A stretch of 13,073 bases of DNA from Octopus sinensis (GCF_006345805.1 NW_021826372.1:1-13073), one strand, 5' to 3'; counted from the first letter of the stretch, positions 1,929 through 2,370 are shown. Notes: a model not told the origin generated them from the sequence alone. Translations and numbers: made by a program.

Positions 1929-2370
1929 TTCGAATGTAGGAGGTATTTGTACCGCACCCTGTACATCTGGAAGATCCTGGAAGGAACTGTTCCAAATTTT
2001 GGCATTGAAAGCTACACAAATGTCATGCCATGTCGCCACAGCACAGTGCCAAAGATCCTACCAACGTCATCACGCTTCAGTACCTGTTATTGCAACAGCT
2101 TGGGTTTCAGGAGCCCACAGCTTTTTAATATTCCCCGAAAGAGCGTGAAGGACCTACACAAAGTGAATGTAGGTGTTTTCAAATCAAAACTAGACTTCTT
2201 CCTGTCGAGAGTCGCAGATAAACCTGCCTCGCAGCAAGATGTGCAAAGGAGGATAGCGTCATCAAACTCCCTTATTCACCAAATGCCACATATTAGAGGA
2301 GGCTCTCAATAATAACAGTATAGCAAAACGGAGGTGCCCCAGCACGGCCGCAGTTCTGAGCTGAAACTAC
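1929..2370 (+). mobile_element. 5'-truncated CR1-group LINE: ORF2 C-terminus (stop 2310-2312) plus 3' UTR
   Basis: The frame reads ECRRYLYRTLYIWKILEGTVPNFGIESYTN...NSLGFRSPQLFN...FKSKLDFFLSRVADKP...SNSL. This matches the invertebrate CR1-group ORF2 C-terminal pattern ERRRERYxxxYxWKILEGxVPN...GPxLFNxLP...FKxxLDxFLxxVPDxP. A short UTR follows. The exact clade is uncertain. Confidence 0.85.

What the first reader, a model, noticed from the sequence alone, without database searches (positions are those of the whole stretch)
2310..2370. CR1-group LINE 3' UTR matches the SINE-A tail: a LINE-SINE partner pair visible in one window
Just after the ORF2 stop, the LINE reads GGAGGTGCCCCAGCACGGCCGCAGT-6nt-CTGAAAC (2330-2367). 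The SINE-A tail (reverse complement of 210-234 plus its flank) reads GGCGGTGCTCCAGCATGGCCGCAGT-7nt-CTGAAAC. That is 22/25 identity in the first block plus an identical 7-mer. Both keep a small hairpin GUGC-YCCA-GCAY, closed by G-C in the LINE and G-U in the SINE. Established: stringent LINEs of the CR1/L2 groups mobilise SINEs through a shared 3' stem-loop. Inference: this LINE family is the motor for the dominant SINE of this genome. I do not know whether this pairing is already published.
Basis: partly seen in the sequence, partly recalled or inferred. Interest (0 to 1): 0.75.

Follow-up and report, generated by a model that had tools for sequence, protein, structure and literature searches.

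The report
Octopus LINE and SINE share tail
A 5'-truncated CR1-like LINE in this octopus window ends in the same roughly 55-base, two-hairpin RNA tail as the window's most common SINE, which is the usual sign that this LINE family copies that SINE; the principle is well known, but I found no paper naming this pair.

Summary
LINE block 2330-2354 matches SINE-A tails at 22/25, with none expected by chance. Eleven independent copies of this LINE family carry the same tail directly after the ORF2 stop. They come from the window, O. vulgaris chromosomes, another assembly and several read sets. Three of them align with the window copy without a break through ORF end, UTR and tail.

Full-length relatives encode an APE endonuclease plus a reverse transcriptase. 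Homology with the SINE is limited to the SINE's last 50-60 nt, at 66-86% identity.

It has two adjacent hairpins. In most relatives an 8-bp repeat, (TAAAAGAA)n, follows, as in the CR1 hairpin-plus-octamer layout. A covariance model built from LINE tails alone finds the SINE tails at E about 1e-15.

SINE-A is probably the octopus tRNA-CORE SINE. Trans-mobilisation is inferred. The RT clade was not tested. The window's own LINE subfamily is probably not the direct donor. This is a new member of a known kind, of moderate interest.

The parts
1926..2315 (+). 5'-truncated C-terminal part of a CR1-like LINE ORF2, about 128 codons with no internal stop, ending in the double stop TAATAA at 2310-2315
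   Evidence: ORF list and translation. It is 50-63% identical in amino acids to cephalopod LINE fragments. Profile A3 finds 53,917 relatives, and full-length ones of about 970-1020 aa carry Exo_endo_phos and RVT_1.
2316..2329 (+). Short 3' UTR spacer (CAGTATAGCAAAAC) between the stop and the tail
   Evidence: It is collinear with the same spacer in L016, the same subfamily from a different data set.
2330..2349 (+). Hairpin 1: a 3-bp outer stem, a 1x1 G/G internal loop, the 4-bp inner stem GUGC/GCAY and a YCCA tetraloop. In this copy the pair A2332/G2347 is broken.
   Evidence: RNAalifold consensus, pair counts and single-sequence folds.
2351..2363 (+). Hairpin 2: CAGUU-CUG-AGCUG, a 5-bp stem.
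   Evidence: Pairs at columns 28-41 and 29-40 occur as C-G, U-A and U-G across the tails. The MFE fold agrees.
2364..2392 (+). Single-stranded AAAC and the 3' terminus. The octamer repeats seen in relatives are absent here, and the end runs into a (TA)n/(TG) microsatellite shared with the neighbouring inverted SINE.
   Evidence: Sequence. Relatives end in (TAAAAGAA)2, (ATTTAAAG)3 or (ATTAAAAC)2.
180..586 (-). Full SINE-A copy with a tRNA-like head, a CORE-like segment, an internal TA/TG microsatellite, a body and the LINE-type tail. The tail is at 193-237.
   Evidence: Alignment of copies. The LINE-only covariance model scores its tail at 55.1 bits, E 2.6e-15.
2393..2798 (-). Full SINE-A copy lying tail-to-tail with the LINE. 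Its tail is at 2405-2449.
   Evidence: 49.3 bits. blastn shows that only its last ~50 nt match LINEs.
1528..1735 (+). 3' half of SINE-A, with the tail at 1665-1714 followed by (TAAAAGAA)2
   Evidence: 34.5 bits.
4748..5215 (+). Older, diverged SINE-A copy with the tail at 5158-5202
   Evidence: 14.9 bits.
7661..7752 (-). 5'-truncated SINE-A tail fragment, with the tail at 7681-7725 followed by (TAAAAGAA)2
   Evidence: 52.8 bits.
10636..10982 (-). SINE-A copy with an internal deletion; the tail is at 10658-10702
   Evidence: 24.9 bits.
11005..11168 (-). SINE-A head and CORE part only, ending at the position of the internal microsatellite
11525..11712 (-). Diverged SINE-A 3' half with the tail at 11556-11586
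   Evidence: 18.1 bits.
11781..11835 (-). Short SINE-A tail fragment
   Evidence: Regex match at 11824-11798 and the sequence itself.
8835..9050 (-). Second fragment of the same LINE superfamily (..[25 protein letters not shown]..). It is cut about 70 codons before the stop, so it has no tail.
   Evidence: Translation. BLASTP against P0005 gives 43% over 42 aa, E 1e-10.

Best explanation
Positions 1926-2392 are a 5'-truncated copy of a CR1-like, non-LTR (LINE) retrotransposon of octopods. The very short 3' UTR of this family is an RNA recognition module. It has hairpin 1 (a nearly invariant GGYGGUGCYCCAGCAUGRCC with a YCCA tetraloop and a G/G internal loop). Hairpin 2 follows directly (CAGYY-loop-RRCUG, variable in sequence but conserved in pairing). 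Then come AAAC and, in most subfamilies, 8-bp terminal repeats. The window's abundant tRNA-headed, CORE-type SINE-A carries the same module as its last ~55-60 nt and shares nothing else with the LINE. The most likely mechanism is the established stringent-type one. The LINE's ORF2 protein (endonuclease plus reverse transcriptase) binds this 3' module on its own RNA and primes reverse transcription on the terminal repeats at a nicked target. Pol III transcripts of SINE-A that end in the same module are taken as templates in trans. Shown here: the homology, its restriction to the 3' end, its presence in every sampled LINE copy that reaches the ORF2 stop, the conserved two-hairpin fold with compensatory changes, and the shared octamer terminus. 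Inferred: protein binding, priming on the repeats and trans-mobilisation.
For: The match is far beyond chance (0 of 200 shuffles). Eleven independent LINE copies carry the tail 1-140 nt after the ORF2 stop. They are the window, L001 and L007 (O. vulgaris chromosomes), L002 (GCA_024449705.1), L003, L008, L015 and L016 (Logan read assemblies), and L004-L006 (ENA). The window LINE aligns without a break through ORF end, UTR and tail with L016 (76% over 407 nt), L003 (74% over 415 nt) and L008 (67% over 406 nt). Family members with full ORF2 (P0121, P0124, P0127, P0128; 968-1017 aa) have Exo_endo_phos and RVT_1, followed by the C-terminal domain found in the window. blastn of a whole SINE-A against all LINE loci hits only SINE positions ~363-416. 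Tail identity is 66-86%; the best are L006 at 86%, L002 at 83% and L007 at 80%, and the window LINE has 72%. For the structure, 92.3% of cells are paired, against 24-42% when partners are slid. The covariation score is 0.256 against 0.186 in shuffles (1/500). Three pairs show double compensatory changes. RNAalifold predicts the same two hairpins. Eight of ten single-sequence MFE folds give this architecture, with z of -3.7 (SINE), -4.7 (L002) and -3.7 (L004). A covariance model built only from LINE tails scores SINE-A tails at 55.1, 52.8 and 49.3 bits (E 1e-13 to 1e-15), as high as the LINE tails it was trained on. The LINE copies L002, L003, L006 and L007 and the SINE copies all end in TAAAAGAA-type octamers. 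Literature: CR1 elements need a 3' hairpin plus an octamer microsatellite as the presumed RT recognition site (PMC8665684; PMC4316615). The shared-tail model and the eel experiments are summarised in PMC3747384. CR1 is among the recently active LINE groups in O. vulgaris (PMC13282606).
Against: There is no functional data. Every LINE copy is a single decayed genomic copy and not a consensus, so some broken pairs and some apparent covariation are noise. The shuffle control does not correct for relatedness. None of the sampled LINE tails has the SINE's own hairpin-2 sequence (CAGUC-AAAU-GACUG), so the exact donor subfamily was not found. The window LINE lacks the octamer repeats and folds only weakly (z -1.0). 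The more distant copy L008 does not give the two-hairpin fold as its MFE. Assignment to the CR1 clade was not tested by RT phylogeny. No intact full-length octopus copy with this tail was recovered. Only short contigs were reachable, so current activity is unknown.
Confidence: 0.8

Rival explanations
1. The tail at 2325-2370 is an independently inserted fragment of SINE-A that happens to lie after the ORF2 stop.
For: SINE-A fragments consisting only of the tail do exist in the window (7661-7752 and 11781-11835). A full SINE-A abuts the LINE end.
Against: Ten further LINE copies from at least five data sets have the tail at the same place. Alignments are collinear through ORF, UTR and tail. LINE tails share hairpin-2 variants (CAGCC/GGCUG, CAGCU/AGCUG, CAGUU/GGCUG) that none of the 13 SINE tails inspected has.
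Confidence: 0.02
2. The direction of transfer is the reverse: the LINE lineage acquired its 3' end from the SINE.
For: Sequence homology alone does not give a direction. The SINE tail is the best-folding and best-scoring version.
Against: The tail is present in LINE lineages that differ by about 40-50% in amino acids. A still more distant relative (L011, 38% aa) has the same architecture, with a compensated inner stem GUAC-CCCA-GUAC. The literature describes octopus SINEs as octopod-specific expansions (PMC8967140). High SINE scores are expected because the copies are young and numerous.
Confidence: 0.05
3. The shared tail is a relic. SINE-A is, or was mainly, amplified by another LINE clade that is abundant in octopus, such as RTE-BovB, the clade of the brain-expressed RTE-2_OV.
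For: RTE-BovB is the most expanded LINE in octopuses (PMC8967140). An intact RTE is transcribed in the brain (PMC9115989).
Against: SINE-A copies end precisely with the CR1-like module and its octamer repeats, with 1-3 units. No RTE-like 3' end was seen in any copy. That paper describes the RTE-2_OV 3' UTR as a microsatellite that begins at the ORF end.
Confidence: 0.07
4. This is a refinement and not a true rival. The partner is this LINE family, but not the subfamily represented in the window. The donor and driver is a sister subfamily that keeps the TAAAAGAA octamers, like L002, L006 or L007, or an unsampled one with hairpin 2 = CAGUC/GACUG.
For: Tail identity to the SINE is 83-86% for L002 and L006, against 72% for the window LINE. 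The window LINE and its closest relative L016 lack clean octamer repeats. The window copy is old, only 76% identical to the nearest sampled relative.
Against: Only one or two decayed copies per subfamily were available, so subfamily consensus tails are unknown. The window copy's end may have been eroded by the adjoining microsatellite.
Confidence: 0.55

Closest known systems
Amniote CR1 LINEs and their 3' UTR, a hairpin plus the octamer microsatellite ATTCTRTG, with CR1-tailed SINEs (PMC8665684, PMC4316615; pairs listed in PMC3747384 Table 1)
   Same: ORF2 has an APE endonuclease and an RT. Copies are severely 5'-truncated. There is no poly(A). The very short 3' UTR consists of hairpin structure followed by an 8-bp tandem repeat. 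SINEs borrow that end.
   Different: The tail sequence is unrelated. There are two adjacent hairpins where one is described. The octamer is TAAAAGAA (ATTTAAAG or ATTAAAAC in other subfamilies). The host is a cephalopod. Membership in the CR1 clade proper was not tested phylogenetically.
Eel UnaL2 / UnaSINE1 (L2 clade), the experimentally proven stringent pair (PMC3747384)
   Same: A CORE-type tRNA SINE shares a ~60-nt 3' tail with its LINE. A conserved stem-loop is followed by short terminal repeats thought to support template slippage.
   Different: UnaL2 ends in 5-nt TGTAA repeats and one hairpin, and its function has been shown in cell assays. Here nothing has been tested functionally.
Bivalve CORE-SINE / CR1 pair Amar_SINE-2#CORE with Amar-1_LINE#CR1 (PMC11481361)
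   Same: It is a mollusc CORE-SINE with a CR1-derived tail. The reported homologies of 35-61 bp at 72-95% identity are of the same size as here (about 55-60 nt at 66-86%).
   Different: It belongs to a different mollusc class. That paper reports the CORE-CR1 combination as new for bivalves in 2024 and does not cover cephalopods. The sequences could not be compared here.
Octopus SINEs OK, OR1 and OR2 (Ohshima and Okada 1994; cited), called 'tRNA-Core' in octopus genome papers (PMC8967140)
   Same: SINE-A has a tRNA-like head with A- and B-box-like motifs. One segment matches the MIR core at 22/27. It is the commonest element in the window.
   Different: Ohshima's 2013 table of SINE/LINE pairs lists no mollusc pair.

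Membership tests
LINE (non-LTR retrotransposon) ORF2 | One ORF encodes an APE-type endonuclease and a reverse transcriptase | tested here: met
   The window holds only the last ~128 codons. Profile A3, which includes the window sequence, hits proteins of 968-1017 aa whose last ~290 aa match it, and these carry Exo_endo_phos, Exo_endo_phos_2 and RVT_1. Pfam finds nothing in the window fragment itself.
CR1 clade of LINEs | The RT domain groups with CR1 in a phylogeny | not tested
The C-terminal motifs (..LDYCSQLWSP..LE.IQR..T..I....YWERL..L.LYSLERRRERY..IY.WKILEG...FK..LD..L..VPDEP) resemble chicken CR1 as I remember it. That is a lead only.
CR1 clade of LINEs | The 3' UTR forms a hairpin directly upstream of the terminus | tested here: met
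   There are two hairpins. 92.3% of cells are paired and three pairs carry compensatory changes. The definition comes from PMC8665684.
CR1 clade of LINEs | The 3' terminus is an 8-bp (octamer) microsatellite and there is no poly(A) | tested here: met
   L002 and L006 end in (TAAAAGAA)2, and L003 and L007 in near-copies. L008 has (ATTTAAAG)3 and L005 has (ATTAAAAC)2. The feature is not met in the window copy itself or in L016, whose ends are eroded or different.
Stringent-type LINE-SINE partner pair | The SINE's 3' end is homologous to the extreme 3' end of the LINE, and only there | tested here: met
   blastn hits are limited to SINE positions ~363-416 of 417. Identity is 66-86% over 59-68 aligned columns. 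The LINE-only covariance model finds SINE tails at E 1e-13 to 1e-15.
Stringent-type LINE-SINE partner pair | The tail is an integral, conserved part of the LINE family | tested here: met
   All 11 LINE copies that reach the ORF2 stop have it. In the one locus without it (L017), LINE homology stops before the ORF end and an unrelated GC-rich flank follows.
Stringent-type LINE-SINE partner pair | The LINE protein mobilises the SINE RNA in trans through the tail | not testable with these tools
   This needs a retrotransposition assay.
tRNA-derived CORE-SINE (SINE-A) | A tRNA-derived head with internal Pol III A and B boxes | tested here: inconclusive
   By eye, TGGCTGTGTGG at head positions 11-21 and GGTTCAGTCCC at 54-64 resemble the A and B box consensus at tRNA-like spacing. 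ARAGORN calls no tRNA and Rfam gives no tRNA hit.
tRNA-derived CORE-SINE (SINE-A) | A central CORE domain | tested here: inconclusive
   There is a 22/27 local match (with one 2-nt gap) to the MIR core oligonucleotide printed in PMC6344866. The literature says tRNA-Core SINEs dominate octopus genomes. No CORE profile was available.

The most novel reading that the evidence does not exclude
The SINE class that makes up about a tenth of octopus genomes, and that has been linked to genome reshuffling and neural transcripts, owes its expansion to a CR1-like LINE family through a bipartite two-hairpin-plus-octamer 3' module. It does not owe it to the RTE elements that have received the attention. 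The SINE keeps its own compensated version of hairpin 2, so recognition would read shape at hairpin 2 and sequence at hairpin 1. On this reading the pairing and the module are not yet described in the literature or in repeat databases.
Probability: 0.3. Interest if true: 0.55.

Novelty: new member of a known kind. Interest (0 to 1): 0.42.

Why it matters
SINEs are the largest transposon class in Octopus genomes: 11.6% of O. vulgaris and about 40% of annotated repeats. They feature in arguments about cephalopod genome rearrangement and brain transcriptomes. The genome papers I could read leave them as 'tRNA-Core' or 'unclassified SINE' and name no LINE partner. Functional work on active octopus LINEs has centred on an RTE element. 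Naming the partner family and a compact, testable RNA module tells annotators how to classify these SINEs. The module is two hairpins, one conserved in sequence and one only in pairing, plus an octamer. It also tells evolutionary studies which LINE landscape to correlate with the SINE bursts, and it gives experimenters the mutants to make. The principle itself, a shared 3' tail in stringent LINEs, has been textbook since the 1990s, so this extends it to cephalopods and does not change it.

Tried and rejected
- ARAGORN on the window found no tRNA.
- Rfam at E<=1 gave only microsatellite-driven miRNA noise. One weak hit at 2329-2447 merely reflects the LINE-tail/SINE-tail inverted repeat.
- Pfam on the 124-aa window fragment found nothing.
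- The single-sequence protein search gave only 3 hits. A profile was needed.
- An exact-pattern scan of JGI metagenome contigs for the tail found three hits, all in GC-rich bacterial-looking sequence and unrelated.
- Cluster look-up of full-length relatives returned no names, so it gave no clade label.
- Text search of the paper library for tail strings returned only unrelated primer hits.
- SINEBase supplements are not held, and Albertin et al. 2015 is not held.
- L017 carries a LINE fragment without the tail, but LINE homology ends before the ORF stop and an unrelated GC-rich flank follows. I treat it as truncated or chimeric and uninformative.
- For hairpin 1 I first tried an outer stem in the register GCGGU/GCCGC. 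I replaced it with the RNAalifold register GGC/GCC with a 1x1 internal loop. That register fits the single-sequence folds and shows the C-G to U-A compensation.
- Pfam found no RT domain in two other RT-like fragments of the window.

Full report
**What the window is.** The 13-kb window is AT-rich and full of microsatellites and retroposon copies. The proteins closest to its coding fragments come from Octopus vulgaris chromosomes and from cephalopod-like short contigs. It is therefore octopod nuclear DNA. I could not determine the species.

**Checking the observation.** After a reading frame that ends with TAATAA at 2310-2315, the plus strand reads GGAGGTGCCCCAGCACGGCCGCAGT-TCTGAG-CTGAAAC (2330-2367). 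The reverse complement of 196-234 reads GGCGGTGCTCCAGCATGGCCGCAGT-CAAATGA-CTGAAAC.
- The 25-nt block matches at 22/25 at two SINE copies, 234-210 and 7722-7698. More loosely, it matches at 2446-2422 and 10699-10675.
- None of 200 dinucleotide-preserving shuffles gave any match with 3 or fewer mismatches.

**The coding fragment is the end of a LINE ORF2.**
- The translation of 1926-2309 (..RRYLYRTLYIWKILEGTVPNFGIESYTN...FKSKLDFFLSRVADKP...) has no Pfam hit of its own.
- It is 50-63% identical to a set of short proteins, two of them from O. vulgaris.
- A profile of these sequences and their longer relatives (A3) was searched against 1.84 billion representative proteins. It found 53,917 proteins at E<=0.001.
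- Many of these are about 960-1030 aa long and match the profile with their last ~290 residues.
- Four of them (P0121, P0124, P0127, P0128) carry Exo_endo_phos and Exo_endo_phos_2 at the N-terminus and RVT_1 in the middle.
- The window fragment is therefore the C-terminal domain of an APE-plus-RT LINE, truncated at its 5' end near 1926.

I fetched every copy I could reach.
- Eleven independent copies carry the tail 1 to about 140 nt after the ORF2 stop or after the decayed end of the frame.
- The copies are the window; L001 and L007 (two O. vulgaris chromosomes); L002 (assembly GCA_024449705.1); L003, L008, L015 and L016 (Logan read assemblies); and L004, L005 and L006 (ENA assemblies). L009 and L010 are the same contig as L008, assembled from other runs.
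- Examples:
  - L002: TAA-T-GGCGGTGCCCCAGCATGGCCACAGCCCGTAAACTAGGGCTGAAACCAGTAAAAGAATAAAAGAATA
  - L006: TAA-G-GGCGGTGCTCCAGCATGGCCTCAGCCACTGGCTGAAACGGTTAAAAGAATAAAAGAATAT
  - L004: ..GGTGGTGCTCCAGCATGACCACAGCCATATGGCTGAAACCAATTAAAGAATTAAAAAA
- The window LINE aligns in one unbroken blastn segment through ORF end, spacer and tail with L016 (76% over 407 nt), L003 (74% over 415 nt) and L008 (67% over 406 nt).
- L016 even shares the spacer TAATAA(TAA)CAGnnTAGCAAAAC.
- The one locus without the tail (L017) loses LINE homology before the ORF end and continues into unrelated GC-rich sequence, so it is uninformative.
- The tail is an integral part of the LINE family, and the refutation condition is not met.

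**Extent of the LINE-SINE homology.** SINE-A is about 400 bp long. It consists of:
- a tRNA-like head;
- a segment that matches the MIR core at 22/27;
- a conserved stretch ending GAAACTGAAAGAAGCCYGTCG;
- an internal (TA)n(TG)n microsatellite of variable length;
- a ~190-nt body;
- the tail.

blastn of a whole copy against all LINE loci hits only its last ~50 nt. Global alignment of the tails, from GGCGGTGC to the end of the terminal repeats, gives 86% for L006, 83% for L002 and 80% for L007. L003 gives 79%, L004 and L005 77%, and the window LINE 72%. The most decayed copies give 66-69%. So the family-level pairing is strong, but the subfamily present in the window is not the best candidate donor.

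RNAalifold on the aligned tails predicts two adjacent hairpins.
- Hairpin 1 is GGY-G-GUGC-YCCA-GCAU-G-RCC.
- Hairpin 2 follows after one base. It is CAGYY-loop(3-8 nt)-RRCUG.
- Then come single-stranded AAAC and the terminal repeats.

Pair counts on a 12-sequence alignment (11 LINE tails plus the SINE):
- 92.3% of cells form standard pairs, against 24-42% when the 3' partners are slid by 1-3 columns.
- The covariation score is 0.256 against 0.186 +/- 0.024 in shuffles; 1 of 500 shuffles reaches it.
- Eight cells carry changes on both sides, against 3.3 expected (2 of 500).
- Three pairs show compensatory double changes.
- The third outer pair of hairpin 1 is C-G in 5 tails, U-A in 3 and U-G in 2.
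- The two upper pairs of hairpin 2 are C-G in 9 tails, U-G in 2 and U-A in 1, and C-G in 6, U-A in 4 and U-G in 2.
- In sequence terms, hairpin 2 reads CAGUC/GACUG in the SINE and CAGCC/GGCUG in L004-L006. It reads CAGCCC/GGGCUG in L002 and CAGCU/AGCUG-type in L003, L008 and L016. In L007 it is CAGUU/GGCUG, and in the window CAGUU/AGCUG.

Single-sequence MFE folds give the same architecture in 8 of 10 cases, with z-scores of -3.7 (SINE), -4.7 (L002), -3.7 (L004), -2.9 (L005) and -2.3 (L006). The decayed window copy folds the same way but only weakly, at z -1.0.

A distant relative from a marine metagenome (L011, 38% amino-acid identity) has a tail of a different sequence with the same layout. 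Its inner stem is compensated to GUAC-CCCA-GUAC and it ends in (AATA)n.

Three caveats apply:
- Each LINE tail is one neutrally decaying copy and not a master sequence.
- The shuffle control ignores relatedness.
- The more distant copy L008 does not fold this way as its MFE.

I rate the two-hairpin model as well supported but not proven.

**An independent test of equivalence.** I built a covariance model from the 11 LINE tails only, using the two-hairpin structure. I searched the window and the two O. vulgaris loci with filters off.
- SINE-A tails came out at 55.1 bits (193-237, E 2.6e-15), 52.8 bits (7681-7725) and 49.3 bits (2405-2449).
- Older copies scored less: 1665-1714, 10658-10702, 11556-11586 and 5158-5202.
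- The window LINE tail, which was part of the training set, scored 54.8 bits.
- SINE tails in O. vulgaris scored 30-45 bits.
- By this model a SINE-A tail cannot be told apart from a LINE tail.

**The terminus.**
- Four LINE copies end in TAAAAGAA-type octamers. L002 and L006 have two exact units, and L003 and L007 have near-copies.
- L008 ends in (ATTTAAAG)3 and L005 in (ATTAAAAC)2.
- SINE-A copies end in one to three TAAAAGAA units.
- A hairpin followed by an 8-bp microsatellite, without poly(A), is the 3' structure used in the literature to define retrotransposition-competent CR1 elements. It is regarded there as the RT recognition site (PMC8665684; PMC4316615).
- I did not test it with an RT phylogeny, and the window copy itself has lost or never had clean octamers.

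**How it most likely works.** This follows the established model for stringent LINEs (PMC3747384). ORF2p recognises the structured 3' end of its template and starts target-primed reverse transcription on the terminal repeats. A Pol III transcript of SINE-A that ends in the same module is used in trans. The pattern of conservation suggests a division of labour. Hairpin 1 is almost invariant in sequence across LINE lineages that differ by about 40-50% in protein, which points to base-specific contacts, for example at the YCCA loop and the G/G internal loop. Hairpin 2 is conserved only as a helix. These last points are inference.

**Rivals.**
- An independently inserted SINE fragment is excluded.
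- Capture of the tail by the LINE from the SINE is unlikely. The tail spans deep LINE lineages, whereas octopus SINEs are described as octopod-specific expansions.
- Mobilisation by RTE elements, which are abundant and expressed in octopus, cannot be excluded by sequence. It has no support in the SINE's 3' end.
- The most probable correction is that a sister subfamily, and not the one in the window, was the donor.

**What is known.**
- Octopus tRNA-derived SINEs (OK, OR1, OR2) have been known since 1994, and one of the OR families is counted among CORE-SINEs.
- Recent genome papers report tRNA-Core and tRNA-Deu SINEs as the main octopus SINEs. They report SINEs at 11.6% of the O. vulgaris genome, most of them 'unclassified', with CR1 among the recently active LINEs.
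- None of the papers I could read names a LINE partner for an octopus SINE.
- Ohshima's 2013 table of SINE/LINE pairs contains no mollusc.
- A CORE-SINE/CR1 pairing in molluscs was reported as new for bivalves in 2024.
- I could not consult Repbase, Dfam, SINEBase or the 1994 and 2015 papers, so the pair may already be recorded there.

**Verdict.** This is an ordinary mechanism in a new host group, and it comes with a well-defined RNA module that can be tested.

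Noticed in passing
window 2330-2449: The LINE tail (+) and the tail of the neighbouring SINE-A (-) face each other across a shared (TA)n/(TG) microsatellite and a T-run (2373-2403). This forms an imperfect inverted repeat of about 38 nt per arm. It produced a weak spurious Rfam miRNA hit at 2329-2447. Which element inserted first, and whether one targeted the other's terminal repeats, is open.
   Followed up: partly
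window 8835-9050 (-): A second fragment of the same LINE superfamily (..[25 protein letters not shown]..; 43% over 42 aa to P0005). It is cut off about 70 codons before the stop next to a long (GATA)n/(GACA)n array, so it gives no information on the tail.
   Followed up: partly
window 180-586, 2393-2798, 4748-5215, 11005-11168: SINE-A has a variable (TA)n(TG)n microsatellite in its middle. One copy (11005-11168) consists only of the head and CORE part up to that point, and several copies consist only of the part after it. SINE-A may be a composite of an older short SINE and a 3' extension, or the microsatellite may be a breakage or truncation hotspot.
   Followed up: no
window 5225-5560 (+) and 11225-11500 (-): A second, unrelated tRNA-headed SINE. 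Its body (..GGCGTCCCATCCAGGTGGGGAACTTATACGCC..GAAACCGGGAAACTGGCC..) resembles the Deu domain as I remember it, which would fit the 'tRNA-Deu' SINEs reported for octopus. Its 3' end does not carry the two-hairpin module.
   Followed up: no
window 7753-8215 (+): An open frame of about 160 codons (..SSDVINLYTHIPH..FDNKTYRQIKGTAMCTQFAPSYVNLVMGYLEE..) that looks like a reverse-transcriptase fragment of Penelope-like type. It directly abuts a SINE-A tail fragment. Pfam gave no RT hit, so this rests on motif resemblance only.
   Followed up: partly
window 3950-4260 (+): A degenerate RT-like stretch (..FVDLENAYDLLPWDMLCCVLK..) with stops, probably an old LINE fragment of another clade. Pfam found nothing.
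   Followed up: partly
window 8455-8585: A long, nearly perfect inverted repeat (..TTTTGCATTTTAAATACCTTGCATGGAAAATCATCAGGGTGTGCAGAG..CTCTGCACACCCTGATTATTTTCCATACAAAGTATTTAAAATGCAAAG..). It looks like a MITE or a foldback element and gave only a weak Rfam miRNA-like hit.
   Followed up: no
protein P0013: A 94-aa protein 57% identical to the window's LINE fragment is deposited at NCBI and UniRef as 'hypothetical protein, partial [Escherichia coli]'. This is almost certainly cephalopod or other animal contamination in a bacterial assembly.
   Followed up: no
L011 (marine metagenome contig ERZ909383) 1085-1175: A LINE only 38% identical in protein has a 3' UTR with the same two-hairpin layout but a different sequence (GGUGUAC-CCCA-GUACAAC, then UUGAC..GUCAG) and (AATA)n where the octamers would be. 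The architecture may be much older than octopods. The host organism is unknown.
   Followed up: partly
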